A stretch of 64,000 nt of DNA from Podarcis vaucheri (Eukaryota): the NCBI GenBank assembly GCA_965113315.1, contig OZ220370.1. The stretch is one strand, 5' to 3'. The notes under the pieces are model-generated. The model saw nothing but the letters and a program-made list of their open reading frames with translations. It was not told where the DNA came from and did no database searches. Position numbers and translations under genes: made by a program. Below are positions 8,930 through 37,182 of this stretch, piece after piece. Each line of letters starts with the position of its first letter. Position 1 is the first letter of the stretch.

Positions 8930-10400
8930 AAGCTTACACCGCCTTGGGGGGCTTGCGGGTTCTCCCTGAGCAGTGCCGTGCATGGGGAGCACTGGGCTGC
9001 CCCACAGAGCCGCCACGCCGGGAGAGCGTAAGCGAGGGAGCCAGAGGCGGAGGCACCGGAGGCAGGCAGGCAGGCAGGCATCTCTCTCCCGATCCCTCGG
9101 AAGCGTCCGGGGTCCAGCCCTTCCTCCACGCTCCCCAGCGAGAACAATGAGCCCTCGCTGCCTCCTCGGTCCGCGCTTCCCTTCGCTCCTTCTCGCGGCG
9201 GCGGAGCGGGGAGGGCTGTGCAGCCTAGGGGGCAGCCTCCGCAAGCCTTTCACCGAGGAACACCCCCGCCCCACCCCACCCCCCAAAAAAGAAGTCAGCG
9301 GGCCCCGCCGGCCCAGCTTGGATGGAGCCGTGCGCCTCGTGCCTCGGAGTCCCGGCGGCGAGCCGGGGAGGCGGAGCGGGAGCGGCCTCTCCTGCAGTTA
9401 ATGGTCGCGACTCTGCGCGCCGCTGTTGACCCGGCGATGCTGGCGGCGAAGCAGCGCGAAGTGGGACGCTGCCGCCGCCGCCGCCGCGAGTTGAGCGCCA
9501 GCAACAGACGGAGCGCAGTCCCGCCGCCGGAGCGCCGCGCCGCCGAGCAATGCCCGACCCCCAAAGTCCGCGCGAGGCGAGCCTGGAGCGGGCAGGGTCG
9601 CGGCCGCATGGAAGGGACGGCTGAAAACTTTTAGAGGGACCTCCCCGCCGCTCCCGCAAAAAGAAAGAAACTTTGCGAGGCCGGGAGATGAGAGGCGCCG
9701 CGGGAAGGAGCCGGCCGAGAGCGCGATGGCTGCCCGTCGTGGGCTTCTGGCTGTGGCTGGGCGTCTCGGAGCGGGCGCTCGCCGCCACGCGCTACGCCAT
9801 CCCCGAGGAGATGCCCAGGGGCTCCTCGGTGGGCAACGTGGTGGGCGACCTGGGCCTGGATCTCGCCCAGCTGCCCGCCAGGAACCTCCGCGTGGTGTCG
9901 GGCGGCGGACGAAAGTACTTCGAGGTGGACCTGGGCAGCGGGAAGTTGCTGGTGAGCGAGCGCATCGACCGCGAGGAACTTTGCGGGGCCCTCTCGCCGT
10001 GCGCGCTGAGCCTGGAGGTGGTGGCCGAGAGCCCGCTGGTGCTGTACGGCGTGACGGTGGAGATCCAGGACGTCAACGACAACGACCCGGCTTTCCAGAG
10101 CAAGCAGATGAAGCTGGAGATCAGCGAGTCGGTGACCCCCGGAGCGCGTTTCCCCTTGGAGAGCGCGCAGGACCCCGACGTGGGAAGCAACTCTCTGCAG
10201 ACCTACCAGCTCAGCGCCAACCCGCACTTCGTGCTGGACGTGCAGACGCGAGGCGACGGGACGAAGTATGCGGAGCTGGTGCTGGAGAAAGAGCTGGACC
10301 GGGAGCAGCAGCGGGAAGTGCAGCTGCTTCTCACGGCGATGGATGGAGGGACCCCACCCCGATCGGCCAGCTTGCAGGTGCTGGTTGACGTCCTGGATGC
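8930..10400. promoter_or_regulatory. CpG island over the PCDHGC3 promoter and the 5' part of the exon
   Basis: Very high GC and CpG density that falls off at about 10.4 kb inside the exon. Confidence 0.85.
9409..9431 (+). promoter_or_regulatory. Pcdh conserved sequence element (CSE, CGCT box; CTCF site) of PCDHGC3
   Basis: GACTCTGCGCGCCGCTGTTGACC, about 270 bp upstream of the ATG, matches the gamma-type CSE pattern (ACTCTGNGCGCCGCTGTT). Confidence 0.75.
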
Positions 10401-12132
10401 AAATGACAACGCCCCTGTCTTCAACCAGTCCATCTACAGAGCCAGCGTGAAAGAAGACACACCCTTGAACACCCTGGTTGTCCAAACCAGAGCTTTCGAC
10501 CTGGATGAAGGTCCCAATGGGGAGATTGTGTACTCTTTCAGCAGTCACACCCCTGCCAGAATCCGACAGCTCTTTGCCCTAGACTCTGCCACTGGAGAAC
10601 TGAGGCTGAAGGGGTTGCTGGATTTTGAAGAAGCCAAATTTTATGAGATTTATATCCAGGCAAAAGATAAGGGTTCAAATCCTGGTGTCGCTCATTGCAA
10701 AGTGCTGGTAGAGATTGTGGATGTGAACGACAACACCCCAGAAATAACAGTGACGTCGGTGTACAGCCCAATACCAGAAGACGCGGCTCCAGGGACTGTG
10801 ATTGCCTTGCTGAGTGTCACGGATCAGGACTCTGGTGATAATGGCCTAGTAAATTGCTTTATACCTTCTGGGATCCCTTTTGCCCTCAGCTCTTCCCTTA
10901 AAAACTATTATACCTTACAGACCAAAGGACCCTTGGACAGGGAACTTGTTTCTGAGTACAACATCACCATCACAGCTCAGGATGCAGGCACACCCTCACT
11001 CATGGCAGAAAAGCAAATACTGGTTAAAGTATCTGATGTAAATGACAACCCTCCTAAATTTCCACAATCCTCCTATGATGTGTATGTGGAGGAAAACAAC
11101 CTTCCAGGGACCCTGATATTTAACATCAGTGCCTCTGACCCGGATCTGAACCGGAATTCCCACCTTTCCTACTCCATCCTGGATAGTCCCATGTCCTCGG
11201 GAGACTTGGCGGGCAGGTATTTTTCTATTAACCGGGAAAATGGCAGCATATATGTCCTAGTCCCCTTGGACCATGAGGGGACCATGGAGTTCAGGCTAGT
11301 GGTCCAGGTTCGTGATGCTGGCCTCCCGCCTCTCGCCACTAACATCACTGTCAATGTTTTTGTCACAGATCAGAATGACAATGCACCCAGGCTCTTATAC
11401 CCAAACTCAAACAACAGTTCTTCGCTCTCAGAAGTCATCTCACCCACAGTCAGCCCTGGTTACATGGTCACAAAAATTGTGGCCTGGGATGCAGATTCTG
11501 GTTACAATGCCTGGCTCTCGTATTCCTTCCTTCAGGTCACTGACCCAGGGCTGTTCACTGTGGGGCTGCATTCTGGGGAGATAAGCACAGCTCGTTCTCT
11601 GCAAGAGGAAGATTCTCGCAAGCAAACATTGCTCATCTTAATAAAAGACAATGGGGAGCCTGCCTTGTCTTCCACAGTGACCCTTGCTGTAGATGTAGCA
11701 GAGACATCTAGGGAGACACTGACAGATTTGACTGCTGTGTCCACTACACCCCAAACAAAGAAGCACTTGACTTTCTATTTAATCATTGCTGTCATCTTGA
11801 TCTCAGTGGCCTTCTTTGTCACCGTGGTTGGGGTGGGGATTTATAAATTTTACAAGTGGAGGCAATCCAAGGATATATTCAAAGCCTCCAGAAGCTCCCT
11901 TTATAGAACCCCGGGGCCTTTCAACCACATAGACACTGTGCGGAGTGGATTTACTCCTCCAAACTTCTACCAGCAGGTCCTCACCACGGACTCTCGCCAG
12001 AGTGAACTTCTGTACAAAATGCCCTTTGCTCCCAGCCCTATGGGGAGCCGCCAGAGCACTATCACAAGATGTGACCCTGCAATATATAACCAGCTAATAA
12101 GCACAAATAAGAGGCTTCTGGTGTCCTCTGAG
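9688..12132 (+). CDS. PCDHGC3: Protocadherin gamma-C3 variable exon (815 aa; splices to constant exons)
   Basis: Signal peptide, six EC repeats (DRE, DxNDN) and TM. gC3-diagnostic motifs EIYIQAKDKG, VTSVYSP, SSLKNYY, KFYKWRQSKD and SSLYRTPGP. Donor GAG|GTAATG at 12132/12133, phase 0. Confidence 0.93.
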
Positions 12133-13754
12133 GTAATGTATGCTTGTTGTCCTTCTCCAGCAAAGTTGGGAAATCCCAGCTCTGAGCTTAAGTTGACTTA
12201 AAGGCAGACCACTCAATGTCTTTCTATCCGGAAACAGGGTAGTTCCTGTAGAACACATTCTTTTTCCTGTTTTCTGTCTCCATCTAGTGCTGTGTCATTT
12301 AATAGCATGATTAAGAGCCCCACCTGTTTAACTCCTGTGCATGTGTTGTTTCCTTCCGACATTACATGGAGTTGGGTGGTTTGTTCTTTCTGCTCTGGGC
12401 CAGATCAATGTGGTCAGCTGTTGTTGGGTTGCATAGTCATTGCCTCTGAAGAATGATAGCTCCCAGTAAGTTTATGTTTTACGAAAAACCATACGTAAGG
12501 AAACAGTAATGCTGTGTAAATAATGGGTTGGATATGTATTGGGAGGCCTTTTGGCTTGGGTGCTTCTTCAAGACGCTAAAGGGAGATCACCTTCAACATT
12601 TCCTTGGGGGCCTAGCCTCTGATGTATGTCTGTTCGATATTCATCTATGATGGGGTGGAAATGTAAGACTTATTCCTTTTCCTTATGTGTATGGTGGAAT
12701 TGAACCTATTCTCTATGTAGCCAAACATGAGTAGGAGTAGGGGTAGGAGTAGGAGTAGCAGAAGAAGAGACATTAGAACAGCGCTCTGATGGCTTCTCAT
12801 TCAGACTAATTTGGTAGGGGGAAATGGCACTTTCTATGGAAGCAATGGCAGCAGCCTTCCAGGGAAGATGCTCTTCTATACAAAAGAGACTTCTGGGAAA
12901 GAGCCTGAGCATAGATGCCTTTCAGAAGGAGGCCTACACACAGGACCAGCCACCAGGTGTGCACCCCCAAATTAGTTTACCTGGAGGCCGCAGCAGGTGG
13001 AGGCAAGGATGGGCAGCAGCATGGGGGTGGTGAGGAGAGATGGTGCTCCCTTGCCCTGATGCTGAGAAATGCCGTTTTCATTTCCCCTCAGTGCTTCTGG
13101 GCCTCAATATAGCACCACTATGTTGAGGCCCTGGGACCGTTGGAGAAGGTGGCAGCTGTTGCCACTTGGTTTGGTGCTTCTGTTCCCAATGAAGGGCCCT
13201 GTGCTTGTTATTTTAAGTAATCGAGGGGGTTGCGGATATTGCTCTGGGGCCTATGCTTGTCAGAGGACCCAGACTTTGAGTTTTCATTGAAAAAATGTGA
13301 GAGCCTAGCCCTTCTAGAAATGAAGTTATCAAGCAAAATGTGTGAGTACCCTTCTAAGTGAGTGAGTGAGCCAGCCCAGCTATCCCCACCTTTTCAGTGT
13401 TTTTAGCAAATGAGTGACGTCTGAGCTGTGGTTGATGAGTAAGTGGTTTGGACACCAGGCTAAAGAATAACTGGTCTCTTAAAGAGCTGCCATTTCCCTC
13501 TTCCATCCAGTGCACTTTCTGCCCTGCTTGTTTCATTTTCTAGTCCTTGGAATTTCTGTTATTTAGCCAATCTGTTCTTTCTACAAAACAGGATGCATCT
13601 TTCCTGTGGTGAGTTGGTCTAAGATCAGGTACTCACTATAAGTTATTTTCTGTAAATATTATTACACAATAAGTGTGGGTAGATGTTAAAGAATACCCCA
13701 CCCTACAGCAAGTGCAAAATGTGAAAAGTATGCAAAGAGGCTTGGGCATTCTGT

Positions 13755-14180
13755 CATACCAACATTTCTCCAATGAAAATAGGGATGTCCCATTCCATAA
13801 TGATAATTTTACTATTTACCATATTTTTTGCTCTATAAGACTCACTTTTTCCCTCCTAAAAAGTAAGGGGAAATGTGTGTGCGTCTTATGGAGCGAATGC
13901 AGGCTGTGCAGCTATCCCAGAAGCCAGAACAGCAAGAGGGATTGCTTTTTTTACTGCGCAGCGATCCCTCTTGCTGTTCTGGCTTCTGAGATTCAAAATA
14001 TTTTGTTTCTTGTTTTCCTCCCCCAAAAACTAGGTGCATCTTGTGGTCTGGTGCGTCTTATAGAGCGAAAAATATGGTATATCCACACATCTTACTGAGT
14101 TGCCCCAGCCACTCTGGGCAGCTTCCAACATATATAAAAAACTTCCCTTCCCTATACAGGATTGCCTTCTGATGGCTTGC
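13755..14180 (+). repeat. Interspersed repeat copy hosting a nested MITE
   Basis: The flanks match the reverse complement of 45500-45738 once 13819-14077 is removed. Confidence 0.7.
13819..14077. mobile_element. Tc1/mariner-pogo-type MITE nested in an older repeat
   Basis: TIR CCATATTTTTTGCTCTATAAGAC ... GTCTTATAGAGCGAAAAATATGG with TA TSD. Confidence 0.85.
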
Positions 14181-17100
14181 AGGCTGCATAAAATTGAGGG
14201 GGCCCAGTCCCCTGCTTAATTGGAGGGGCTCAGCCCCCCCATGTTGACCCTGATCAGGTGGGAGATAGTAGAGATGCTACGATACTAAGATAATGTGTTC
14301 CCTGTTGAATGTCCAGGAAAACATAGGCAGCCCCATCATAGAGTTCATATCAAAAGTCAATAAGTGAAAAGATAATGCAATATGTTATTGTATGAAAGTG
14401 AATATTAACTAGAGATTTTGCCTGCAATCCAGAAAAGCTACTGTGTAGAGAGGAGAAGGAGGAGTAACAACAACAACAATAGCCAGGTTCTTTCTCACAG
14501 TGCCCACAAAGCACACCGGTCAACACCTACATAGGTAAGCTTTTTTTCTGACTCATCCACCAGCTGCACAAAGCTATTGTGCTTTAGGGTTTCTGAGTCT
14601 CAAGGTTTTACCTAAAGTTTCAGGCTTCAGCTTTCTTTTGGGAATCACAAGTGGCAGGCTACTTTCAGCTTGACTTAAATGTTGTTGTCTTGCACCCCAT
14701 CCCATTCTGTCCAACAGTCTTCCCCCCCAAAATACCAGGCATAGGCAAACTGCCCAGGAGGCATCAAATTCCCTTCATTCCCAGGCTCCTCTCATATTCT
14801 GATCACTGATAACATTAGGTAGCACTCGTGTGACACTCATTTTATCTTGTTATTGTGTAACAGCAGAAGGCTGGCAGTGAATATGTTAATTGCTGGAATT
14901 GTATGTACATGCTAGTTTCCTTTGAAATATTCATGAACATTTTCACTCTGAAGAGAGCACGTTGTGTGTCTTGTTTGTAAGATTTCCTCACAGAGGCCCA
15001 GTTCTCACCAAGATGGTTAATCTGTTTCTAGGCTGTACCATTTCAGATTGCAGATGAAACCCACATCTTTGAATGTTCCTGCGTACAAAGAATTCAGAGC
15101 TCTGTCAAAGCTAGATGTCAGGAAGATGGATCCTAACCGTGGGGTGGCTGGCATGGAGGAGCATACAGCCATCTTGAGTCCCCACCTGCAGTCTGAAGTG
15201 GTACAGCCCAGACTCAGGTGTACAACCTCATTGAGAACTGAGCCAGAAGCACAATTCCTATAATTCCTTGGGAATGATTGCTGCAGTGTAGATACATGCT
15301 CAGGGTGCATTCTGCTACACAATTAGATGCTATAGGCAGGATGTTGTTTTAGGGTACAGTGATAAACTGCGGCTTTATGTGGAGAGGGTGCTGGAAGAAG
15401 GACCAGGAAGCCCAGAGATTGCAAGAGTAAAGGAGAGGTTGCCAGAAAGCATCTGGCTCCAGGCCAGTTCTCACCCCTGATAGTTTATGAATAGCTTTCA
15501 GGGCCATCATTTCAGTAACTGGTTTTGAGTCTTTGTACCTGGTTAATTTGGCATTTAGTATTTGGCATCTGATATCCGAACATGTTTTAGAGCAATGTGG
15601 TACCTAACCTTTCGGTTGTGTGGGAAATATATATACACATTCTCAACAGTAATTGATATTTTGTATGTAGCTTCCTTTTATCTTATACCTTGAGTTTTAA
15701 ATTGTGCATCAACTTTTAATTAATTCATCATAGGTTTTTAATATGCTGTATTTTACTGCTTGGTTTGGTTTGTGAGCCACCCAGAAAACTGCTATAGGGC
15801 AGCCTTATAAATGTAATAATGATGATGATGATGATGTTAATTAATTGATAACTGATTAGTGATTTCATCTGTACTTTTAATTTGTTGTTGAGATTTAAAT
15901 TATTATTGTTTATTAGTACTATTTTGATGCCAAAAGGGTTGCATTGCTGTTATCAATTCATAATTAGGCTTTCTTAACTGCCATACGTGTTGCTTTGCTT
16001 GAAATGGTTGACATGTGAACCCTGAGATCCTTGGAAATTGTTTTAGCTACGTTTTCCTACCCAAAATTACATAGTCTGGGAGATTGTTAAGAAAATGACT
16101 ATGATCAGAAAAATAAGGCGGGCAAAAGAGACAGCGGAAGAGAGGTGTGTTTGTGTGTCCGTGTGTGTCCTGTCAATAGACATAAGCAATTCCAGCACAA
16201 TATGATGACCCTAAGCTGATGTACTCTTAAAGCTGCACCAGATCCCACACTTAATCTGTACAGGCAGAACCATTAGTTTCTTTAGTGTTTTTAACAAAAG
16301 TTAGAATGATGCACAGATGCTTTTCATTAGTAGGCCATCTGGCTCTAAAATATGCAAAACCAGGGCAGACTCTCACCAAATATAATCAGGGCTCCTTCAC
16401 ATATTACTGAAACAATGTGAACATTTAGTGTGTTCATTACATTTTCAGTTGAGGAGGCTGTACTTATTAAAATCATATGTGCTTGAAAATATGTTGCAAG
16501 AGGCCAGGACCTGCTGCGCTTTGTGCACGGAAATAAATGCAGGCGACAGCTTCATATGCTGTGGGTTTTACTGCCAAACACACTGGTCTTCTAGTTTGTA
16601 ACAAGCATCCCTGAATTATAGAACATTGAGATTGGAAAGAAGAAATCTCACTTTGAAAATTAAGATGAGCATATATGCAGCCAAAGCAACACAGGAGAAT
16701 CCAAGATCAGAAACTTTATCATCTAATCTAGAGCGATGCAAGAAAGTAACCATATTTGTTTTTCTGTAAAGATAATGGAAGACAAAGAGTGGAAAGAGCT
16801 GGCTAACATCACGCTGTCTAGCCATCTGCCACTGGATGAGATTTGACAGCAATAAACATACACAATCCCTGCCCAGAGACCCCACTCAAGATCTTATGGT
16901 GCCTTTCACAAATGAGTTTAGTGTAGGGGGATGGGAGCATGTAATGAAACTTACTGTATGTTGACCCCCAACATTTAAAATTTCCCTCTTGCTTTCTTGT
17001 CTACAATCTTGAACCTAGAAAATAGTCATCAACTGTCCAAAAAGTCTAAAGCAATCAAACTCAATCACATTTCAGATTTTGAAGTGAGATTTCAGTCTCC

Positions 17101-17749
17101 CCACTCCTCTCAAATCCTAATTACAAGGTTTCCCATTTCCATTGTTGAAATGTTTTCCTGTGCACCAAATATTTATTGTGATTTCATTAAACACAAGGGT
17201 TTAGAATACAGAATTTCTTTTCCATTCCATTAAGTTAAATGGCACAAGTGCGCATTAGGAACTGATTTGAATGCTTCTCATCAAATACTGTTTCCTGTGA
17301 AGTTTAGCACAGTGTCATGTAGTATAATTCATGTGTGTTAGTTAAACCAAGCCAAGTGGCTTTGCATCTTTCAAAGCCACTTAGCTTGGTATGGAGCGTT
17401 CGTAGCTCTGTGAACCAAGACTGTATATAACTAGTTAGAAATATTTGTACAGTATGTGTGCTATTTGCGACTAAATGGATTCTGAAAATAAATAGGATTG
17501 CAAAGTTGAAAGTTATGTGCAGGTGAATTCAAGAGAAGCAAGAGTGTATAAAGACATTGGTATTATCAAGATAAGAACATTCATTATAAAGAATAGTATC
17601 CTTAAGTTTTTTTAATGTGTATTCTCAGGCATTAGAAAAGGCAGAATCAGTAAGTCAAGGAATGTATTTGATATTGTGATTTTTGGTGTTGTAATATACA
17701 AATACAAACTTTTGAGCTGAAGAAAATTGCTCTTGATGTAGCCTGAGTC

Positions 17750-19160
17750 CAGAATCTCAAGGTACTTCCAACCTGCAGGAGTTTTGTGGGTGCTGCTAAT
17801 TGTTCTGCGCTCTCTGCCCAGGCACTGTGCCAATCCCTGACCATCACTAGTCCAAGTGGACTAGAAGGGTGAGTTTAGGTTACATAGAAATCATAGCAAA
17901 GAACGGGAAATTGCATCCCCAAACAACTGCTATATAATAGTTGATTAGTGAGATGATAACTGTGGAAATAGATTTTTACTTCTTTTAAGGAACCTGTAAA
18001 CTGTGAGTCCCTGTGTACATGTGAGTCAAGCTCCTTCATGGAGTCAAAATGGATGTAAGAAGATCCATGGAAATGTATCAGGCAGAAGTGGGAAATGCAG
18101 GTGTTGATGATTCCTACCATCTCCAGGGCCTGTGACACAGAGAGATATTTAGAATCAGAGAAATTAACATTCCTTGGTTAGTAGAACAAGTAGCAGTTCC
18201 ATCATCACTTACTTGTTAAGACTTTCTTGTCTGTTGATGTGAAGAGATCTGAACTTGCGTCTTTGAAAAACATTGCCCGGGAATTAAGGAAGTTGAGCAT
18301 TGCTTGGTCCTGAAAGCTCTATATTAGAGCAACACCTTACTTAGTATGGCAATTCCGTATATAGGGGGACTCCACCCAATGCAACTATACTCCAGCTGGG
18401 TCATATGTGACTATTGGGAAGTCACAGCTGTGGTGAAAAGGAGGCTTGCCTATAAAATAGAAGCTATAAGTTTAATGATAAAATGAGGTGGATGTCTTTG
18501 CCATGGAACATATGGTGGTGCACATTTTTTATGTCCCCAAATACCCAAAAGATTGTACCTTGGTCAAAACAAACTTTGTCCGTGCCAGAGAGCATGTCTC
18601 TGCACATAGCAAGCAGCTCACTCCAGAGGCAGTGGAGCAGCAGTGATTGCCAGTATTCCCAGATGCCATGGGCCGTGTTTCAAAACCAGGTTTTAGTCAC
18701 AAATACTCCTCTGGACAGTGAAGACCAATCTAGCTAACAGAATAACAAATGCAATACGAACAACCTGTGATCATTGCCCTATATTATCTGCACAGTACTC
18801 CTGGAGAAGAACCATCACCGTAAATACATTCTGTCTGTTTCATTTCTACTGTGAAATCTCACACACGGGAGGTGCCCAGCTTCTCATCCACACATGATGC
18901 CACTAGGAGCAAATCCAGGTGCTTCCAGTGCAAGCACATAAGACAGAGGACACCACTTTTTCAACAGCAGTGTACCTCATCTACCTCTTCACTGAAGTCT
19001 ACCATGACAACATTCAGAAGGCATTGTCTACCTTTAGGGGAGAGAAAATACTTCTATTCATAGATTTCTTTCATCTTTTCCAGGAAGTCCATGAATCTCC
19101 TTGACCTGACCCCTTCCCTAACTATTATCTTAGTTGTCTCCACTATGGAAGCTGTTTGTT
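17750..19160 (+). pseudogene. PCDHGC4: Decayed protocadherin gamma-C4-like variable exon (many deletions, frameshifts and stops)
   Basis: Collinear remnants in shifting frames: GVLWVLLIVL (signal, 17778), IEIIAKN, KEPVNCESLC (17987-18016), EDP/MEMYQAEV (to 18090), SSSIITYLL (18192), VDVKRSE, EHCLVLKAL (18295), EVDVFAMEH (18485), SVPES, FQNQVLVTNTPLDSEDQSS* (18678-18737), ATRS/EQIQVL..VQA (18899), IYLF..HDN (18979-19011), DLTPSLTIILVV (TM, 19103). These match human gC4 as recalled: KNPIDREALC, EGPLEMYRAEV, SNSISSYRL, LDVKKRSD, AMEQH, TLPES, FRNQFSLVTAGPLDREAKSSY, HATRSFDYEQTQTL. It lies directly after gC3. Confidence 0.8.
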
Positions 19161-19897
19161 GGGAACATCAGGGACCAGGTTCTTGCTCATAAAACTCTTT
19201 TTAACCTTGCTCCTCCTAACCTTTGACTCCAGAGGCTTAAAAATTTCCTTTGTGATGTCATGGTTTATTCTGTTTTGTGCACTGGCTGCAAAACTCCTGA
19301 AATTTAGGAAAGGGTATATGGAGAGACTCTTAGTATACTCCATTTGGAGAACAAAGGCCATAGTGGGAATGAGTTTTGAAGAGCTCTCCTGCATCGGTTA
19401 TTGAATGCCATTCATTTAAAGGAAATTCAGGCAGACAATCAATGGGTCTTTTAACGTGATCTTATATCCAGCAAATGGCAGTATATCACTTAATTGTGCA
19501 GCCACTGGTGTTTGTTGCATTCTGTTTTTTAAAAAATCTGCAAAATATGCAGTTTGCTGGTTTAGCTTATAACCCCAACCATTCCAAACAAAGAGTGTTC
19601 ATTATTGAATTTAAATGCTTGTGACATTCATTAATGAATTCAAAAGCTTGTAATGACATAGGATTTATTGTTCATATAATTATCTTGGGAAATCCAGTAA
19701 CTGACAGCTGGCGAATGGGCTCCCAGCTCTTCTTCAACATTTGCACTGGCGCTTTAAGACCTCCCCCACCCCATTGCTGGAGCTGGGGAGGGGGAGAATG
19801 GGTGGTCCATTGCAAACAGCCAGGCGCTTCCTTGATTCCAGGAGCCCTGTATCTGCTTTGATGGACAACAAAGCTCCTCCCCTCTTGATTCCGATAC

Positions 19898-19918
19898 GGA
19901 CTAGGCACCGCCGCTGTT
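19898..19918 (+). promoter_or_regulatory. CSE-like CGCT box upstream of the second intact C-type exon
   Basis: GGACTAGGCACCGCCGCTGTT, about 160 bp upstream of ATG 20073, shares CGCCGCTGTT with the gC3 CSE. Confidence 0.5.
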
Positions 19919-20072
19919 TTCTGTGGAAGAAAAACAGAGAAAAGATGCAGATGGTGCGCCGCTTTCTCATCCCTTGCGCGATCTAACCCGGGATTCTGTG
20001 TTGTTTCCTTGGCTGTGCTGGAATCAGAGAGGACAGAGGTCCAGCAAAGGAAGAGGAAATTTTGGCGACATT

Positions 20073-22523
20073 ATGCTGTCTCTGGAAGAAAGACTACTCC
20101 TGCCATGGCAAGTAAGAGCTTTGCTTTTGGTTTCTGTCTCTCTCCAGAGTGCTGGAGAGATGACCCAGCTCCGTTATTCGATTCCTGAGGAGTTAGCTCC
20201 TGGGGCCTTTGTTGGGGATGTGGCTAAAGACTTGGGTCTAGATGCTGCCCGGGTGGTCTCCCGACAGCTGCAGATCATGGCTGGCTCTGCTGAAAAGTAC
20301 TTCGAAGCCAAGGTGCCAAATGGTGTCTTGGTCGTGAAAGAACGGCTTGACCGAGAGCAGCTTTGTGGGCCCAGCTTACACTGCCTGCTCTATCTGGAGC
20401 TCCTACTTGCAAACCCAACAGCCTCCCATCGTGTGGAAGTTGAGCTCTTGGATGTGAATGACAACGACCCAGTTTTTCTTACCAGTCTCACCCATTTGGA
20501 GATAGCAGAGTCTGCAATGCCAGGGGCCCGCTTCCCCCTGGAAAGTGCTGAAGATTTGGACGTTGGCATGAATTCAGTCAGCACCTACCAGCTGAGTCCA
20601 CGTGGACAATTCAGCCTCAGTGTTAAGTCACATAAAGGCGGCAGCAAACCTGAGCTGGTGTTAGAGAAGGCGCTGGATAGAGAACAGCAGCAGCGCTACC
20701 CCCTGGTGCTTACAGCCCTGGATGGAGGAGTTCCTGCTAAATCCGGGACAGCAAAGATTCTCGTGTCAGTCATAGACGCCAATGACAATCCACCTGTCTT
20801 TAACCAGTCGGTGTACAAAGTTAGCCTACTAGAAAATGCCCCAGTGGGGGCCCTTGTGATACATTTACAAGCTACAGACAGTGATGAGGGGGCAAATGGG
20901 AAAGTTTCCTACTCCTTCAGCAGCCACACTCCACAGAAAATCCGGAAAATGTTCAGCCTTAATGAGGAGACTGGGGAGATAAGAGTCCTGGGAAGTGTGG
21001 ATTACGAAGATGACACATTGTATGAAATTGATGTGAGGGCCAAAGACCAAGGGTCACCTTCCATGGATGCACACTGCAACATCTTAATGGAGGTAGTGGA
21101 TCTGAATGACAATGAGCCTATCATTAGGTTCACTTCCCTCACCACCACCATACCAGAAGATGCTCCCCCAGGTACCACAGCAGGGCTCCTCAGAGTCAGT
21201 GATGCAGATTCTGGGGAAAATGGAGAAGTACAGCTTCATCTCCCTGCAGATGTCCCCTTCCAGCTTGTACCTTCCTTTAAGAACCACTACTCTTTGATCA
21301 CCAGTGGCCCCCTAGATCGGGAGGAAATCTCACAGTACAAAGTTATGATCACAGCTACGGATTCTGGTTCTCCGCCTCTCTCCAGTCAAAGAAACTTCCT
21401 TGTAAATATATCTGACCTGAACGATAACCCACCCCACTTCTCACAGCCTGCATATGAGACCCTCGTAACTGAGAACAATGCTCTGGGGCTGCCAATCATT
21501 TCTATATCTGCCTTTGACCCTGATCTGGGGCAGAACTCACACCTGTCTTATTCGTTAGTGGAGCATATCATAAATGGAATGCCCATTTCCTCCTATGTCT
21601 ATGTTATGGAGAACGGTACTATCTACAGTGGCTGCTCATTTGACTATGAGCAAACCCAGCAACTGGTCTTCCAGATTCAAGCTAAGGATAATGGTTCTCC
21701 TCCACTCTGTGCCAATGTGACTGTCTCCATCTTCATCATAGACCAGAATGATAATGCTCCTCTCGTTGTATACCCTGTAACCAAGAAGGGGGTCCTAGCC
21801 CAGCAGCCAGTTCCTTTTTCTGCACAAGGAGGTTACCTGGTAACCAAAGTCACAGCTGTGGATGCAGACTCTGGGCAGAACGCATGGGTTTCTTATAAGC
21901 TGCAGCAAGCCACAGACCCAAGCCTTTTCCAAGTCTCGGCGTTCACAGGAGAGATCCGAACCGTCCGAGCCCTCCTGGAACAAGACGCCCCTTCCCAAGA
22001 GTTGGTTGTTGAGATCTTGGACAATGGGAAACCACCTCTGTCTGCCACAGCCACTCTGATTCTTAATCTAGAGCATGAGCATGAGTTGGGCACAGCAGAC
22101 CTCAGAGAGTCCAGCATGGAACAAGAAGGGCTGTCTCACCTGACCTTGCAACTCATTATTGCTCTAATCACAATCTCAGGACTTTCTGCTCTGGCCTTTG
22201 TGTTTTTAGCTATGAAGTGTCTTAAAAGATTGAAAGGAAGACACTCAGAAGTGGGTTGGACCAGCGACCTGAAGGGTAGGAACTCTATTTCTGTGGGAGG
22301 ACACTTTGACACGTTCTCAGTACGCTTGAGCCAGGAGGAAAAAATGGAATTCCCTACAGCCTTCATTGGGGGAGATGTTGTTACTCCTTTTACCCTCCTA
22401 AGGCCTGGCCAGACCCACTTTTCAGAAGGGAGGAATTTCAGGATAGCTACACCAGTCACTCAGCAGGATATCAACAGCACAGGCACACTTCTGGCCTGCA
22501 GCCTTTCCCGAGAGCCAAACGAG
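20073..22523 (+). CDS. Protocadherin gamma C-type variable exon (817 aa), gC4/gC5-related paralog
   Basis: Intact signal peptide, six EC repeats and TM. Donor GAG|GTGAGG at 22523/22524, phase 0. EC5-TM motifs are gC4-like (FDYEQTQ, NAWVSY, DLRESS..EG.S.LTL), but EC1-EC4 lack the gC4-diagnostic residues. Confidence 0.9.
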
Positions 22524-24052: not shown

Positions 24053-26503
24053 ATGGAGCCACATTTGTCCCGGCAACCCTCTTTCAAATGGCAAGTACTG
24101 GGTTTGTTTTTGCTGTTCAGCCGGGCGTTGGTTACAGGACAGATCCACTATGCCGTGGTGGAGGAATCGGAGCTGGGCACCGTGGTGGGAAAGGTGGCTC
24201 AGGACTTGGGCTTAACGGTGGCAGACCTTTCCCGTCGCAGGCTGAGGCTGGGCTCTGAGGAGAGCAAGAGGTACTTTGCAGTTAACTTGGCCAACGGTGC
24301 TCTGATAGTGAATGAAAAGATAGACCGAGAGACCCTGTGTGGAGCAAGCTCAGGGTGCATTTTGCCAGTCCAAGTAGTTATAGAAAATCCCTTGGAGCTC
24401 TTTCACCTGGAGGTAGAGATCCTGGACTTAAATGACAATTCCCCCGGTTTCCTCACCCCCAAGCTTGTGCTGAGGATAGCAGAGTCTGCCGCCACAGGGT
24501 CTCGCTTTCCGCTGGAGAGCGCTCATGATGCGGACGTGGGGACCAATGCAGTCAGTGTCTACCGACTCAGCCCCAACCCCCACTTCTCACTTAATGTAAA
24601 GAATGTGAACGATGGCAAGCTTTTACCTGAGCTGGTGCTAGAGCAACCTTTGGACCGAGAGCAACAATCGGAACACCAGCTCATCCTGACTGCCTGTGAT
24701 GGGGGGGACCCTGTACTGTCAGGAACAGCTCTGATCACCATTGTGGTCCTGGATAATAATGATAATGAGCCTGCATTTGACCTTCCTTTGTACAAGATAA
24801 GATTTTCGGAGAACATCCCTGTAGGCTCTTTGCTTTTCAGACTTAATGCAACCGACCCTGATGCAGGTTCCAATGGGGAAATACAGTATTCCTTTGGAAT
24901 CCACACACCTGATTCCATCCAGAAGTTGTTTGGCTTGGATCCCCACACAGGTGAGATCCGTGTCCAAGGAGTTGTGGATTTCGAAGAATCTCATTTTTAT
25001 GAGCTTCATGTAAGGGCCAGGGACAAGGGCATTCCTCAAATGGAAGGCCATTGTGTAATCCAAATGGAAGTTGAAGATGAGAACGACCACCCCCCAGAGG
25101 TTCTCCTTACCTCTCTGGTAAACCCCGTGCCAGAAAACACCCCTTTAGAGACAGTGGTAGGGCTTTTCAATGTGCGAGACCAAGATTCAGGTGCCAATGG
25201 AAAGGTGAGCTTACAAATATCACCAAACTTGCCCTTTAAAATTAAATCTTTTGAAAACCACTATTCTTTGATTACCTCTGAGAAACTGGATAGAGAAACA
25301 GTTTCTCGATACATTATCAAGTTGACGGCCCAAGATTCAGGGTCCCCACCTCTAACCACAGATGTCACCATCTTGCTGAACATTTCAGATGTTAATGACA
25401 ATGCCCCGTACTTCTCTCAGCCCTTCTACAACTCCTTCTTGAAGGAGAACAATCCACCTGGCTCTCTGCTATGCACTGTGGCGGCCTCTGACCCTGACGA
25501 GGGGGACAATTCCCGGCTCACGTACTCGGTGGCAGGAAGCCCCATTCAAGATGCTCCAGTCTCTTCTTTCATTTACGTCAACCCAGACAATGGGAATGTC
25601 TATGCCCAGCACTCTTTTGACTATGAAACGCTGCAGGTGCTGCAAATCCCCATCATGGTGCACGATGCTGGGTCACCCCAACTGAGCTCCAGTGTCACTG
25701 TCTACCTCTTCATAATGGATCAGAATGATAACACGCCTGTTGTTTTGCACCCAGTGACTGGTCGGGAACTGTCTGCAATCCAGAGGATCCCTCAGTCTGC
25801 ATCGGCAGGCTATGTGGTCACCAAAGTCACTGCCGTGGATGCAGACTCTGGCCACAATGCCTGGCTGTCTTACTCCTTGCTTTCCCAGTCTACTGACCCC
25901 TCCTTGTTCCGAGTGGCTCCCTACACTGGGGAAATCTGGACTGTTCGGGAGTTCCAGGAAACAGATCTCCCGGCACAGAAAATCCTTGTACTAGTGAAGG
26001 ACAATGGAGAACCGCCTTTGTCTACCACCGTCACCATCGTGGTCTCATTGGAGGATAAAGTAACTGAGGAAAGGCCCCAGTCTCGTGATTTCCTGACTCA
26101 CCCCAAAGAAAAATCTGACCTGACCCTCTATCTGATTATTGCGCTGGTGGCAGTTAGCATTGTGTCCCTCGTTACGTTCATCATCTTGTCTGCAAAATGC
26201 TTTCGGAATAAAAAAGCCAGGGGTTCTTCTTGCTGCAGCCTGAGTGGTGCTCCTGCCAGGGATGTTTTCAAACAATCCAGCCCTAAGCTTCAACTGAACT
26301 CAGATGGCACATTGAAATACATGGAGGTCACACTCAGGCCCACAGACTCCCAGAGCCAGGGCTATAGAGCCAGCTATTCTCCCGGCTCGGACAGAAGTGA
26401 TTTCACCTTTATGAGGCCTGTGGATTATCCTCAACCAAGTACTCTGACGAGAGACTTTGACACTTTCTTATCTCGTACTGATACACTGAACCATCCCAGG
26501 CAG
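24053..26503 (+). CDS. PCDHGC5: Protocadherin gamma-C5 variable exon (817 aa)
   Basis: gC5-diagnostic motifs KWQVL, VVEESE, LGSEE, TVVGLFNVRD, SDLTLYLI and KQSSP..Q..SDGTLKYMEVTLRPTDSQS. Donor CAG|GTGAGG at 26503/26504, phase 0. Confidence 0.93.
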
Positions 26504-27384
26504 GTGAGGTAGCATTTTGTCCTTTTTCTCCTTTCCCACATGAAACTGGTGTCTCCAGTAACACTTTGAAACTTGACTGAGGGCTGATTCATCGGTTATC
26601 GGAATAGGGTGGGGCCTCCTTCTTCATAACCTAACCCTGCACCACATAGTCATAACGCCTTGGGAAAGAGAGAGCAGGAGAGGGGGGGGAATTACATTGA
26701 TTTCTTCCCACAAATTGCTGCCTTTTAATGAGAGAAAGTGGGTAGGGGAGCAGGGACTGGAACTAGGATGTGAACAATAAGAAAATGATAATTTAAAATC
26801 ATCCTTCAAATGCTGCCTGTCACAAAGTTAGCTCTTCATATTTTTGCAACTGCTAAGTCCCCCCCCCCCATACAATTAGATTTCTTTCCCTGAGAAAAAC
26901 CAAGCACTCCCTTCAGTTTTTACATTGGAAGGGTGGAGTCTAAGGCTTCTGAAATACTGGTAAATAAAGCTAGATATTAATTTGGTAGCCTAGAAATAAC
27001 TAAAAGAGATTGATCTGGAAGCTTAGGATGGGGTAAGAGGAACTATTGTTTCCTAGAATTCATTGAATTATCTTTGTTCATAAAAATGACAAATCAGCTG
27101 TTCTGTTGTGGATGTAATACGTGAGGAGTCAGTGTGCTTTTAGAGCAAAGATTTCTTTGCAGCGTATGCTTCTAAGAGTCCTATAGCTAGCACAGAAGCC
27201 AAAACCAGACAAGATTTTGGGCTTTGTTTTCCATTGTCTGCCGTTTAGCCTGGTGTCTCTAGGTTAAAAACAGCAGGTTACGCGGTCCTTTTTCACACAG
27301 TAGCAACTTCCAGACTTGGATTGGTGCGTGTGTTGCTGTCCTGGGAAGGAGGCTGCTGATTGGATAAATAGAAAGGCAGTCTCA

Positions 27385-27394
27385 GCCAATGAGC
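27385..27394 (+). promoter_or_regulatory. CCAAT (NF-Y-type) box upstream of the fourth intact exon
   Basis: GCCAATGAGC, about 245 bp upstream of ATG 27630. Additional inverted ATTGG boxes at about 27320 and 27359. Confidence 0.45.
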
Positions 27395-27629: not shown

Positions 27630-30068
27630 ATGCTCAGAACAGAAAACTCTGCCTGGCGTTTGGGACTCGTGCATGCCTTTGCCTTCTGTCTGTTTCTGAG
27701 TGACTGTTTTGCACAGATCCGTTACTCTGTCCCAGAGGAACTCACTCGAGGAGCCTTTGTAGGAAATGTTGCTAAGGACTTAGGAATGGATGTGACAAAG
27801 CTTGCAGCTGCCAATCTGCAGGTGCTTTCTGATTCTGACTCCCAGTACTTCTCTGTGAATGTGAACACTGGAATCATAATAGTCAATGACAGAATAGACA
27901 GGGAGCAGCTCTGTGGGCAGAACCTGCGCTGTTTCTTGCATCTCAAACTTGCTATTGAAAACCCAGTGGAGTTCTATCGCATCGAAGTGGAGATTCTGGA
28001 TATCAACGACAATGCGCCTGTGTTCTCAAGTAGCACAATATCTCTGCAGATCTATGAACTGGCTGCACTGGGTGCCCGTTTCCCCATCCCACACGCACAG
28101 GATTCAGATGTAGGAACTAACACTTTACAGACCTACCACCTGAGCGCCAATGAGAACTTCAACCTCAACGTCAAGGCACGTACAGATGGCACCAAATTCC
28201 CAGAGCTAGTACTGGAGAAACCCCTGGACAGGGAGCACATCGCTGTCCACCACTTGGTCCTGACAGCTGAAGATGGGGGCATATCCCCCAAATCTAGCGC
28301 TATTCGAATTGCTGTCCACATTCTGGATGCCAATGATAATCATCCGGTTTTTGACAAACCTACTTATTATACCCGCTTAGTAGAAAACTCTCCTCCAGGA
28401 ACCCTGGTGATTAAGCTGAACGCAACAGACTTGGACGAAGGGCCTAATGGAGAGGTTCAGTATTCCCTCAGCAGCCATAACTCAGAAGCCTTGCGCAGGA
28501 TATTTGCTATCAATGAGACTACGGGAGAGATCCGTGTCCAAGGGAGCCTGGATTTTGAAGAGGCTAATGTCTATGAGATCGAAGTGGAGGCTAAGGACAT
28601 GGGCTCCCCTACTATGGAGGAACACTGCAGTGTTATGGTAGAAGTCACGGATGTCAACGACAATGCACCTGAAGTTATTCTCACCTCTTTCTCCAGCTCT
28701 ATGGGTGAAGATGCGCCTCCTGGCACTGTAGTTGCTGTGATACATGTCAAGGATAGAGACTCTGGGGATCAAGGGAAAGTCCGGTGTGATCTGCCCAGAA
28801 ACCTTCCTTTCAAACTTCGGAAAGACTTTGAGCACCAGTATTCCTTGCTCACCAGCGAGCAGCTAGATCGTGAGAGCACTCCGCAATACAACGTCACCAT
28901 CTATGCCTTTGACCTGGGGAATCCACCTCTTTCTGAGCACACCTCTTTCTCCATAACTCTGGCAGATGTCAATGACAACCCACCTCATTTTGACAGGCCA
29001 TTTTATGAAGCCGTCATAGAAGAGAACAATCCAGTGGGGGTGGTACTGCTTAGAGTTTCTGCAACAGATTCTGATAAGGACCAGAACTCCCGTTTGTCTT
29101 ATTCTGTTTTGGCGAGCCCAGGGCAAGGATTGATTGAGGACATCACCTCTTATGTCTCCATCAACCCAACAAATGGAGATGTCTTTGCAGAGAGCCCTTT
29201 TGATTACGAGCATACGAATCATTTTCAGTTCCTGGTGGAGGCGTGTGATGGTGGCTCCCCTCCTCTCTGCAACAGAATCATGGTGCACATCTACCTCCTA
29301 GATCAGAATGACAATGCACCCTGGATTCGATTCCCCTTTACTGGGAAAGATTCTGTTGTGCAGTTCAGAATTCCACGATCTACTGCAGCCAATGCCTTAA
29401 TCACAAAAATTATGGCAGTGGACTTGGACTCTGGGCGAAATGCTTGGCTCTCTTACCATGTAGAGCAAGCCACAGACCCTGGTATTTTCAGCATGGCCCT
29501 CCGTAGCGGGGAGGTGAGGACCACGCGAGCATTACAGGACATAGACAATCCTACCCAGGACCTTGTCCTGGTTGTCAAAGACTCAGGTGATCCTTCCTTG
29601 TCCACCTCAGTCACTGTGATGGTGCTCTTGGAGGAGAGCAGCCCTGAAACCTTTCTGGGGTTAACAGCTCACTCAGTGGAAACTGAGGGACCTCCCACAT
29701 TGACTGTGTACCTTATCATCTCCTTGGCAGCAATTTCCACCATCTCGCTGATGGCTTTGGTGGCCTTGGGAGTTCGATGCCTCCGCCGTGATTCACGTGC
29801 AACATCTACCATCTTTGGATGCTGTGGAAGCAAAGCTGGTGGGCTTCAAGATGCTTCGGATCACGTGATGGGACATTGCCATTATCAGCTGAGCCCTGGA
29901 GATGCCATGATAGGAGTGCAAGTGGCCACTTCTGGACCCCCGGCCCGTAGATACAGATCCTGCTTTTCTCCTGTCTCAGACATTAGCGAATTTGTATTCA
30001 TGAAACCTAATCTGACACTTAGGACAGCTTCTTGCAGCAATCTCACTGAACCCAGCTTCTTTGGCAAG
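27630..30068 (+). CDS. Additional protocadherin gamma C-type variable exon (813 aa), downstream of gC5
   Basis: Intact signal peptide (..CFAQIRYSVPEE), six EC repeats, TM and the gC5-like cytoplasmic motif YRSCFSPVSDISEFVFMKP. Donor AAG|GTGAGA at 30068/30069, phase 0. Confidence 0.9.
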
Positions 30069-30549: not shown

Positions 30550-31430
30550 GTGTGTGTGCGTTTCGGGGAAGGGGCTTCTCTGCTGCTGCTGCTGCCGCCG
30601 CCGCCGCCGAGGAGGGAATTGCCGCTTGTCTGTATCCATTTCACAGCCCCTTTTCTCTGCTGCTCCTTTTGCCAATGAGCTGCTGCTGATCCGAGCGCTT
30701 TAAAATCCCCCCGCTCCCCCCTCCCGCCTCTCCAGCTGCAGCCCGCGCCTTTCCGCTGCACAGCACCTCTCAGGTCACCCCGGAGCCGCCAGGAGCAGAC
30801 CTGGGGGGCGGGGCGGGGGGCACCGGACTGCGGCGGGGTCCGGAGGCAGCAGCGGCCACCCCCGGGCTGGATACCTGGAGCAGAGGCAGCCGCTGGAGAC
30901 GGCCATCCTTGCGCGCAAAGGAGCCAGGCATGGGCGGCGGGCAGAGCTGGTCGTGGCAGCTGCTGGCGCTGGTGGCTGCCGTCTTGTCCCTGCCAGGGCT
31001 CATCCCCGCGCAGATTCGCTACTCCATCCCAGAGGACCGGGACCCAGGCTCTTCCGTGGGGAACGTGGCGAAGGACCTAGGCGTGGACGTGCGGAGCTTG
31101 TCCGCTCGCCGCCTGCAGCTGGTCAGCGACGGGATGCGCCACTACTTCCATGTCAACCTCGCCGACGGCATGTTGCTGGTCCACGAGAGGCTGGACCGCG
31201 AAGCTCTGTGCAGCTCCAGCCCCACGTGCTCCTTCCCTCTCCAGCTGGTGTTGGAGAACCCCCTGCAGCTACACCGGGTGGAGGTGGAGATCCTGGACGT
31301 GAACGACAACGCCCCCAAGTTCCCGAAAGACAGGGTTTCCTTGGAAATCACCGAAGTGGCCAACCCGGGCACCCGCTTGCGCCTGGAAGCCGCCGAAGAC
31401 CCGGACACGGGCTCCAACTCCATTGCCACC
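30550..31430. promoter_or_regulatory. CpG island promoter of the last variable exon, with CCAAT box and TATA-like TTTAAAA
   Basis: High CpG density. (CTG)5(CCG)5 at 30580-30609, GCCAATGAGC at 30671-30680, TTTAAAA at about 30699. Confidence 0.75.
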
Positions 31431-35930: not shown

Positions 35931-36855
35931 CATATAGTTTTTTATTTGCAGGATCCTAGGAGTCCAGATTCACCTGAATCAATTCTAATTTTGACGTTGC
36001 TTGAATAAGATGTCGATTACACCCTTGTATCCTGATCTTAAAACATGTCTGTCCATTTTGTTTAAGGAAAAAACACATAAACAACGGTTCGGGTGCAAAT
36101 CTCTCTAATGGTGTGGAATATTATTACTGAAGGATTAATGGAGGAGACTGACAGGATATCTGGAGTTTTGCAGCATGCATCAACCACACTGTGTCTTTCA
36201 GCTGTGATCACAAAGAGCCATTCAGACATGCTGCTCATAGTGGCATTTTATGTACTCCTTTATTTACAAAATGTCCATTGTTCTAATAATACAACAATGT
36301 GGGTGGAAAGTAATACATGGCTCAGTCTATTCTGATATAGTGTCTTCTGTTGCGCCTTCAAAGAAATCATTATTGTTGTGGGAAATGGAATTTTTAATCT
36401 CAGTGGGCGAAAAAGATTGCAAAGCTCCAAAGATCAAAGGAAACAGAAGACATTAAATCAAAGCCCTAACACTGACCTGTTTCAGAAAAGATTATAAATT
36501 AGGAAATTCTATTAGCATTTCAGATGTTGGTATTCTCTCAGTACCAATTAATTCTGTTCTTCTCCCCCCCAAAAAAAAAAAATATTCCTGATGTTCTGGT
36601 GTTCTCCGGTTTAAATGATGCCCCTTCAAGCTTATTTCATGCTTCATTTATTCATGGATAGTTTCTGACTGTCTTATCTTCTACAAGATTATTTAGATTA
36701 CTTTCTTATCATGTTAACCAATCACGCTTCTTTAGAAGTATTTTGGAACATATAATGGTGTTCTCTGCTTGTGTGTGCATGTGTGTGTATATTTAATAGC
36801 TGAGCTTCATTTTAGGAATAGAAGCATTAAACCTCTCTTTGTGTTTCTCTTGCAG

Positions 36856-36914
36856 CAAGCACAACCTAACACAGACTGGCGTTTCTCTCAGGCCCAGAGA
36901 CCAGGAACCAGTGG
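36856..36914 (+). CDS. PCDHG: PCDHG constant exon 1 (59 bp; [20 protein letters not shown])
   Basis: Polypyrimidine tract and TTGCAG acceptor, GG|GTGAGT donor. Peptide and length match the gamma constant exon 1. Confidence 0.95.
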
Positions 36915-37182
36915 GTGAGTTATTTATTTTCTCATCTTCTGCAAAGCTGCTCCAAAGTTCCAACTATGGGTTTTAGTTCTGTGCTGTTGTGGAAATGCAC
37001 TGGATATATGGATGCGTAGCTGAGGCAGCAGCAGCCTGATCTTTCTCTACAGCTGTTCTGCCACCATTTCTATAATACATTGTGCTAAAAAAAAATTGAA
37101 AAGGGTTGTGTGAGTTTGAGTCTATGTTATCTCACACTTCAGTTTTCCATATGCAGTGAATAAACCAACCTATGGATTAAGG

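What the first reader, a model, noticed from the sequence alone, without database searches (positions are those of the whole stretch)
17750..19160. Hidden fossil of PCDHGC4: the isoform essential in mammals appears dead in this lizard
Seen: between gC3 and the next intact exon, the + strand encodes a collinear series of cadherin motifs in shifting frames, from a signal peptide to a TM remnant (KEPVNCESLC, EDP/MEMYQAEV, SSSIITYLL, VDVKRSE, EHCLVLKAL, EVDVFAMEH, SVPES, FQNQVLVTNTPLDSEDQSS*, ATRS, EQIQVL, IYLF..HDN). Several residues are gC4-specific as I recall human gC4 (KNPIDRE, EMYRAEV, LPES, FRNQF, AKSSY, ATRS), and none of the five intact exons has them. The position right after gC3 is the mammalian gC4 position. 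Established: in mouse, gC4 is the single gamma isoform required for neuronal survival and postnatal viability, and biallelic PCDHGC4 variants cause a human neurodevelopmental disorder. Inference: this lineage tolerates loss of gC4, so the survival function was either transferred to another C-type exon or tied to gC4 only in mammals.
Basis: partly seen in the sequence, partly recalled or inferred. Interest (0 to 1): 0.9.

Follow-up and report, generated by a model that had tools for sequence, protein, structure and literature searches.

The report
Claimed dead gamma-C4 exon: unproven
The stretch between two lizard protocadherin exons does contain short peptide look-alikes of mammalian gamma-C4 in the right order, but they are barely better than chance. 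That lizards lack a gamma-C4 counterpart was already published for the anole in 2009.

Summary
The window is the C-type end of a lacertid protocadherin-gamma cluster: five intact variable exons and three constant exons. Eight of them match residues of a solved gamma-C4 EC1-4 chain (7jgz) in collinear order.

The match is not shown to exceed chance:
- tblastn with the five paralogous exons, a profile HMM, Pfam, nhmmer and PDB searches of the best pieces find no cadherin signal.
- Other protocadherins used as decoys give equally good collinear chains elsewhere in the same spacer.
- A family profile puts its best island at 17987-18100 and its third-best segment at 18693-18734, with P about 0.03-0.08 against shuffles.
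- The DNA between, before and after these two anchors shows no excess signal.
- Some "gamma-C4-specific" motifs are family consensus or are shared with the next exon.

I put a genuine, very old exon relic at about 0.35. The decisive test, full-length gamma-C4 against this DNA with frameshifts allowed, could not be run because no gamma-C4 sequence was available by reference.

The second half of the reading holds but is not new. None of the five exons is a one-to-one gamma-C4 counterpart, as Jiang et al. reported for anole in 2009.

The parts
17750..19160 (+). The claimed fossil region. It is ordinary AT-rich spacer (GC 0.37-0.46) with stops in all frames. As a whole it is not shown to be cadherin-derived.
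   Evidence: No Pfam, PDB, HMM, tblastn or nhmmer signal. No repeat copy elsewhere in the window.
17987..18120 (+). Island 1, a candidate remnant of the end of EC1. Frame A reads KEPVNCESLC...EDP. One base out of frame it reads MEMYQAEVGNAGVDD.
   Evidence: It is the top ungapped family-profile segment of the whole spacer: 40.2 half-bits, profile columns 82-119. The frameshift-aware profile score is 44.5-45.5, P 0.035-0.065 against 200 shuffles. Against 7jgz residues 58-72 and 85-99 the BLOSUM62 scores are 34 and 38 (by hand).
18678..18737 (+). Island 2, a candidate remnant of the end of EC4. It reads FQNQV-LVTNTPLDSEDQSS followed by a stop where the family has Tyr.
   Evidence: It is the third-best profile segment: 36.4 half-bits, columns 402-415. 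It is also the only + strand hmmsearch hit, at -6.6 bits, which is noise level. It matches 7jgz residues 371-391 at 12/21. A close relative has a 13-nt indel at 18664, T>C at 18678 and A>G at 18732.
12202..19922 (.). The 7.7-kb spacer between the gamma-C3 exon and the next exon. It is far longer than the 0.8-1.5 kb spacers between the other C-type exons.
   Evidence: ORF table. It contains a MITE-like repeat at 13759-14177.
9688..12201 (+). E1, the intact variable exon that is the gamma-C3 orthologue. The end coordinate is that of the ORF, not the splice donor.
   Evidence: 431.6 bits to mouse Pcdhgc3 EC1-3, 4zi8. It groups with bird gamma-C3.
20073..22523 (+). E2, an intact variable exon (anole 'gamma-c4' by position). 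It has squamate and turtle orthologues but no mammalian one-to-one partner.
24053..26512 (+). E3, the intact variable exon that is the gamma-C5 orthologue (ORF end).
   Evidence: 458 bits to gamma-C5 EC1-3, 4zpo. 74% identity to the gamma-C5-type representative P0234.
27630..30068 (+). E4, an intact variable exon with squamate, turtle, crocodilian and bird orthologues. No mammalian orthologue was found.
30930..33449 (+). E5, an intact variable exon (ORF end) with Varanus, turtle and bird orthologues. No mammalian orthologue was found.
36853..36915 (+). Gamma constant exon 1.
   Evidence: tblastn with P0001. Positive control of the profile tests, 64.8.
46762..46848 (+). Gamma constant exon 2.
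55740..56012 (+). Gamma constant exon 3.

Best explanation
Positions 17750-19160 are ordinary non-coding spacer. The stretch is an intron for upstream gamma isoforms and lies between the gamma-C3 exon and the next C-type exon. The listed peptides are real translations. Most are the short, weak, collinear matches that any protocadherin query yields by chance in 7.7 kb read in three frames, helped by cadherin motifs that recur six times per protein.

No exon relic can be demonstrated with the sequences available here. The lizard does lack a one-to-one counterpart of mammalian gamma-C4. That fits the differential loss of ancient C-type paralogues already described for anole. It does not need this stretch as evidence.
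For: Searches of the spacer find no significant cadherin signal:
- tblastn of the five exons gives only noise, with the best hit on the minus strand at E 0.077.
- hmmsearch gives scores of -6.4 and -6.6, inside the range of shuffled sequence, -3.6 to -8.5.
- Pfam finds no cadherin family in the ten best pieces.
- PDB searches, which include gamma-C4 7jgz, return nothing for the FQNQ piece. For the EMYQAEV piece they return only a Sel1-repeat protein.
- nhmmer and blastn with the paralogous exon DNA find no significant match.

Decoy and null tests show that chains of this kind arise by chance:
- E1-E4 give collinear chains of segments scoring at least 30 (T = 106-134) at other places in the spacer, against T = 109 for gamma-C4 by hand.
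- P(T >= 109) over 162 decoys is 0.006-0.28, depending on thresholds chosen after the fact.
- The frameshift-aware BLOSUM null has a median of 43 and a 90th percentile of 50. The gamma-C4 island scores about 45-47.
- At profile threshold 26 the best chain is not the fossil chain.
- The rectangles between, after and before the two anchors give z = 0.8-1.1, -0.4 to 0.1 and 1.1-1.8.

A close relative differs by a 13-nt indel and by changes in 'matching' codons, at a density similar to the neighbouring spacer.
Against: The best profile island and the third-best segment of the whole spacer both lie on the + strand. P values are 0.03 for the threshold-22 chain and 0.035-0.065 for the frameshift-aware local score. 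Eight natural control stretches stay at null level.

The position directly after gamma-C3, and a spacer five to ten times longer than the others, are what a lost exon would leave. The profile lacks gamma-C4, so its power against a gamma-C4-type relic is low.
Confidence: 0.6

Rival explanations
1. A genuine but very old unitary pseudogene. A sixth C-type variable exon of the gamma-C4 type once stood after gamma-C3 on the + strand. It died before squamates radiated and has decayed in place by substitutions, frameshifts and net deletion. Only two or three short islands are still recognisable: the end of EC1 at 17987-18120 and the end of EC4 at 18678-18737.
For: - The matches to the solved gamma-C4 chain are collinear. 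Three segments have BLOSUM62 scores of 34, 38 and 37. The first pair is 83 nt apart in the DNA against 84 expected, which implies a single 1-nt frameshift between them.
- The family profile independently picks the same two islands as first and third best in the spacer. The threshold-22 chain runs from 17987 to 19284, covering profile columns 82 to 709. P is 0.03-0.065.
- The syntenic position fits, and the spacer is 7.7 kb.
- EMY.AEV, FRNQF and DVK(K)RS(D/E) are absent from 450 other cadherin-family proteins in hand.
- The published model is differential loss of ancient C-type paralogues.
Against: - Significance is marginal and shrinks once the number of statistics tried is allowed for.
- Decoys do as well elsewhere in the spacer.
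- There is no excess signal between or beyond the anchors.
- PDB searches of the pieces do not retrieve gamma-C4.
- Part of the supposed specificity is family consensus or is shared with E2.
- No sauropsid gamma-C4-type protein turned up in three homologue searches. Any loss would therefore be very old and the relic near the limit of detection.
Confidence: 0.33
2. There was never a lost exon here. Mammalian gamma-C4 is the fast-diverged positional orthologue of E2, the exon between gamma-C3 and gamma-C5 in both lineages. On this view the lizard still has 'its gamma-C4' and the spacer holds nothing.
For: - The order is the same in both lineages: C3, then X, then C5.
- Among the 450 proteins in hand plus the window's five exons, only the E2 clade shares the gamma-C4-like EC4 motif: F(K/R)NHY in E2 against FRNQF in gamma-C4, both followed by SL(I/V)T.GPLDRE.
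- NCBI names some E2 orthologues 'gamma-C4-like'.
Against: - E2 scores no better against gamma-C4 EC1-4 (459.8 bits) than E1 (464) or E3 (466.9), far below the orthologue level of about 1.4 bits per residue.
- Jiang et al. 2009 place the anole counterpart with coelacanth gamma-22, not with human gamma-c4.
- No tree including a mammalian gamma-C4 could be built here.
Confidence: 0.07

Closest known systems
Differential loss of C-type gamma-protocadherin paralogues (Jiang et al. 2009, anole cluster, PMC2764143)
   Same: There are five gamma-c exons in the same order. The c3 and c5 exons are orthologous to the human ones, the other three have no human counterpart, and human gamma-c4 has no lizard orthologue. 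My comparisons with solved structures and my tree agree with this.
   Different: The species is a lacertid, not an anole. In the text I could read, the paper does not describe a relic between gamma-c3 and the next exon. Its figure showing 14 pseudogenes was not available to me.
Mammalian PCDHGC4 (solved EC1-4 chain 7jgz)
   Same: Eight short peptides of the spacer match it collinearly. The position after gamma-C3 is the mammalian gamma-C4 position.
   Different: No search tool gives a significant alignment. EC5, EC6, the transmembrane segment and the cytoplasmic part could not be compared. Stops and frameshifts occur throughout.
Protocadherin variable-exon pseudogenes in clustered Pcdh loci (14 in anole, at various stages of decay)
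   Same: If real, this would be one more such pseudogene, on the same strand, between functional exons.
   Different: The known examples are recognisable by ordinary homology search. This one is not.

Membership tests
Relic (pseudogene) of a clustered-protocadherin variable exon | Statistically significant protein-to-DNA or profile-to-DNA similarity to cadherin repeats | tested here: inconclusive
   tblastn, hmmsearch, Pfam, PDB and nhmmer give noise or nothing. The frameshift-aware family-profile score has P 0.035-0.065. The chain statistics have P 0.03 and 0.076, and the maximum segment 0.14.
Relic (pseudogene) of a clustered-protocadherin variable exon | Signal spread along the exon in domain order (EC1 to EC6, then the transmembrane segment), not only at one or two motifs | tested here: not met
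   The rectangles between, after and before the two best islands give z = 0.8-1.1, -0.4 to 0.1 and 1.1-1.8 against 500 dinucleotide shuffles.
Relic (pseudogene) of a clustered-protocadherin variable exon | Lies inside the cluster on the strand of the functional exons | tested here: met
   It is on the + strand between E1 and E2, upstream of the constant exons.
PCDHGC4 orthology of the putative relic | Groups one-to-one with mammalian gamma-C4 rather than with other C-types, by tree or reciprocal best alignment | not testable with these tools
The sequence printed was not retyped, under the rule on long sequences.
PCDHGC4 orthology of the putative relic | Carries residues specific to gamma-C4 | tested here: inconclusive
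   The motifs exist in 7jgz, and exact forms are absent from 450 other proteins. However, E(M/L)(Y/F)x(V/A)EV is the family consensus. The gamma-C4 EC4 motif also has a close counterpart, FKNHY / FRNHY, in the E2 clade.
PCDHGC4 orthology of the putative relic | Syntenic position directly after gamma-C3 | tested here: met
   E1 is the gamma-C3 orthologue, and the region lies in the next spacer.
PCDHGC4 orthology of any intact exon in the window | Similarity to gamma-C4 clearly above paralogue level | tested here: not met
   Bits against 7jgz EC1-4 are E1 464.0, E2 459.8, E3 466.9, E4 441.8 and E5 435.1, about 1.0-1.1 bits per residue. True orthologue pairs reach about 1.4 (E1 with gamma-C3, E3 with gamma-C5).

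The most novel reading that the evidence does not exclude
A relic of a gamma-C4-type variable exon, more than 250 million years old, survives between gamma-C3 and the next exon of a lacertid. That would show that sauropsids once had, and then lost, the one gamma isoform that mice and humans cannot do without. The neuronal-survival role would then have to be carried by another isoform in lizards, or have arisen only in mammals.
Probability: 0.3. Interest if true: 0.55.

Novelty: already known. Interest (0 to 1): 0.25.

Why it matters
[quoted passage not shown] Whether other amniotes ever had it bears on how old that dependence is.

The solid part of this finding is that lizards have five C-type exons, none of them a gamma-C4 counterpart. 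That has been in print since 2009. A proven relic would add the direction of the event (loss rather than mammalian gain) and a minimum age. The evidence here does not reach that standard.

Tried and rejected
Attempts that did not work:
- **Obtaining a mammalian gamma-C4 by reference.** Homologue searches with E2, E4 and a 560-residue piece of E2, and a representative search with E3, returned squamate, turtle, bird and fish relatives and giant cadherins, but no gamma-C4.
- **Candidate stand-ins for gamma-C4.** The bird protein P0401 is an A/B-type chimera. The fish/shark 'protocadherin-10-like' group (for example P0395) is closest to Pcdh10, at 820 bits, and is probably the delta-subcluster type.
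- **Chain scoring with cheap jumps.** It ran in the linear regime (546 against 537 on the reverse strand) and was useless.
- **Transposon origin of the region.** There is no other copy in the window and no tandem repeats in 17750-19160.
- **Expression.** Bulk and single-cell RNA runs of a close relative laid 1-7 reads on 5.9 kb, with no joints. This is uninformative.

Full report
**Setting.** The window is the 3' end of a protocadherin-gamma cluster of a lacertid lizard. E4 is 99% identical to a Zootoca vivipara protein and E2 is 98% identical to a Podarcis raffonei protein. It holds five intact variable exons on the + strand:
- E1: 9673-12201
- E2: 20073-22523
- E3: 24053-26512
- E4: 27630-30068
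- E5: 30909-33449

The three gamma constant exons lie at 36853-36915, 46762-46848 and about 55740-56012. The finding concerns the 7.7-kb spacer between E1 and E2. The other spacers are 0.8-1.5 kb.

**What is known.** Jiang et al. 2009 (PMC2764143) described exactly this layout in the green anole:
- There are five gamma-c genes, c3 to c7.
- c3 and c5 are orthologous to the human genes.
- c4, c6 and c7 have no human orthologue.
- Human gamma-c4 has no anole orthologue.
- The authors explain this by differential loss of ancient C-type paralogues.

[quoted passage not shown] Human PCDHGC4 variants cause a neurodevelopmental syndrome (PMC13096477).

**Identity of the intact exons.** I compared each exon with solved C-type structures:

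| Exon | gamma-C4 EC1-4 (7jgz), bits | Orthologue-level match |
|---|---|---|
| E1 | 464.0 | gamma-C3 EC1-3 (4zi8): 431.6 bits over 312 residues |
| E2 | 459.8 | none |
| E3 | 466.9 | gamma-C5 EC1-3 (4zpo): 458 bits over 317 residues |
| E4 | 441.8 | none |
| E5 | 435.1 | none |

The two orthologue-level matches run at about 1.4 bits per residue. Against gamma-C4 all five exons run at about 1.0-1.1 bits per residue. None is therefore a one-to-one gamma-C4 counterpart.

A tree of 191 variable-exon units places each of E1-E5 in its own clade with other sauropsids:
- E2 groups with squamates and turtles.
- E4 groups with squamates, a turtle, a gharial and birds.
- E5 groups with Varanus, turtles and birds.

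**The observation.** All the listed peptides are literal translations at the stated places. I first took them for pareidolia, because no standard search found any significant cadherin signal:
- tblastn of E1-E5 on the spacer gave only noise on both strands. The best hit had E 0.077, on the minus strand.
- A profile HMM gave -6.4 and -6.6 bits, within the range of shuffled sequence.
- Pfam found no cadherin family in the ten best pieces.
- nhmmer and blastn with the paralogous exon DNA found no significant match.

One search then printed the solved gamma-C4 chain aligned to E2. Eight window peptides match it in order:

| Window position | gamma-C4 residues | Identities |
|---|---|---|
| 17987 | 58-67 | 5/10 |
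| 18070 | 86-102 | 8/17 |
| 18192 | 135-143 | 5/9 |
| 18233 | 151-158 | 5/8 |
| 18295 | 178-186 | 4/9 |
| 18485 | 287-295 | 4/9 |
| 18579 | 328-332 | 3/5 |
| 18678 | 371-391 | 12/21 |

The DNA spacing is always equal to or shorter than expected, and the first pair is off by a single base. Exact forms of EMY.AEV, FRNQF and DVK(K)RS(D/E) occur in none of the 450 cadherin-family proteins I had fetched. That made the claim worth a proper test.

**Is it more than chance?** A full-length gamma-C4 could not be used in scripts. That step is left out. I therefore calibrated with sequences I could reference.

(a) *Pairwise decoys.*
- The three gamma-C4 segments scoring at least 30 by BLOSUM62 are 34, 38 and 37 (by hand), so the chain sum T is 109.
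- E1-E5 give chains with T = 106-134 in the same spacer. Four of the five lie at unrelated places.
- Over 162 protocadherin units on the + strand, the minus strand and shuffled spacer, P(T >= 109) ranges from 0.28 to 0.006. The small values appear only with the threshold and spacing limits tuned to the gamma-C4 hits.
- A frameshift-aware local alignment has a null median of 43 and a 90th percentile of 50. The joined EC1 island scores about 45-47.

(b) *Family profile (891 columns, no gamma-C4 in it).*
- The best ungapped segment of the whole spacer is 17987-18100, at 40.2 half-bits on columns 82-119.
- The third best is 18693-18734, at 36.4 half-bits on columns 402-415.
- Against 302 shuffles, P is 0.030 at threshold 22, 0.076 at threshold 30 and 0.14 for the maximum segment.
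- The P of 0.017 at threshold 26 belongs to a different, plainly random chain.
- The minus strand gives 213 against 224 at threshold 22.
- The frameshift-aware profile score is 44.5-45.5 (41.6 with the fourth, most jump-friendly parameter set), with P 0.035-0.065 across the four parameter sets. Natural control stretches sit at the null level. Constant exon 1 stands out as a positive control at 64.8.

(c) *An independent test.* The profile sub-rectangles between, after and before the two anchors, each against 500 dinucleotide shuffles, give z = 0.8-1.1, -0.4 to 0.1 and 1.1-1.8. The "collinear series" between and beyond the two islands is therefore at chance level.

(d) *Direct searches of the three best pieces against the PDB, which contains gamma-C4.*
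- The two searches covering the FQNQ island returned nothing.
- The EMYQAEV piece returned only a Sel1-repeat protein, at E 0.94.

(e) *Specificity is weaker than claimed.*
- The family consensus at the end of EC1 is mEmYrVEVEI, and E4 has VEFYRIEVEI.
- The fish/shark group has ELYRVEV.
- The E2 clade has FKNHY-SLITSGPLDRE where gamma-C4 has FRNQF-SLVTAGPLDRE.

**Other evidence.**
- The region has no other copy in the window and no tandem repeats, so it is not an obvious transposon.
- Contigs of a close relative differ in the region by 12 substitutions, a 13-nt indel at 18664, a change in the "F" codon at 18678 and one in an "S" codon at 18732. This is about the density seen in the neighbouring spacer, and there is no sign of coding constraint.
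- RNA runs laid almost no reads.

**Weighing.** In favour of a relic:
- The position after gamma-C3 fits, and the spacer is unusually long.

Against a relic:
- Every significance estimate is marginal, about 0.03-0.08 once the tuned variants are set aside.
- Decoys do as well elsewhere in the spacer.
- Nothing supports the parts of the "fossil" other than those two islands.

My simulation shows that the per-frame profile search loses a decayed exon at about 0.4-0.6 substitutions per site even when the profile contains its own clade. A gamma-C4-type relic of amniote age could therefore well be at or beyond the limit of detection.

I put a genuine relic at about 0.33-0.35, chance resemblance at about 0.6, and "E2 is the diverged gamma-C4" at about 0.07.

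**Verdict.**
- The title claim, a dead PCDHGC4, is unproven.
- The absence of a gamma-C4 counterpart among the intact exons is real and already published.
- No human sequence or contig was used.
- The species of chain 7jgz is not given by the tool. I believe it is mouse, from memory.

Noticed in passing
window 13759-14177, 45497-45731 and 2659-2704: A short repeated element with 32-33 nt inverted arms (MITE-like) sits in the gamma-C3 to E2 spacer. Copies at 73-100% identity lie in the constant-region intron and upstream of E1.
   Followed up: partly
window 9000-10499 and 30500-31499: Only E1 (gamma-C3) and E5 begin in very GC-rich DNA (GC 0.62-0.72), which looks like CpG-island promoters. E2, E3 and E4 start in DNA of ordinary composition (GC 0.45-0.53).
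   Followed up: no
window 20073-22523 (E2) and relatives P0033, P0054: In these searches the E2 clade was found in squamates and turtles only, with a coelacanth 'gamma-C5 isoform X10' protein (P0119) as its neighbour in the tree. No bird, crocodilian or mammalian member turned up. Its EC4 motif FKNHY-SLITSGPLDRE is the closest thing in the data to the gamma-C4 motif FRNQF-SLVTAGPLDRE.
   Followed up: partly
proteins P0363-P0450 (fish and sharks; not in the window): A well-conserved fish/shark 'protocadherin-10-like / gamma-C3' group is 51-54% identical to E2. It is closest to solved Pcdh10 (820 bits for the gar protein P0395) and may be the delta-subcluster gene of the clustered locus.
   Followed up: partly
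window 18664, 18403, 15470 and 15516: Contigs of a closely related species (organism D) differ from the window by a 13-nt insertion behind 18664 and by single-base indels at the other three places. This shows free indel turnover in the spacer.
   Followed up: no
window 22562-24053, 26512-27615 and 30134-30909: The spacers between E2, E3, E4 and E5 are only 0.8-1.5 kb, so each promoter must sit almost against the preceding exon's splice donor.
   Followed up: no
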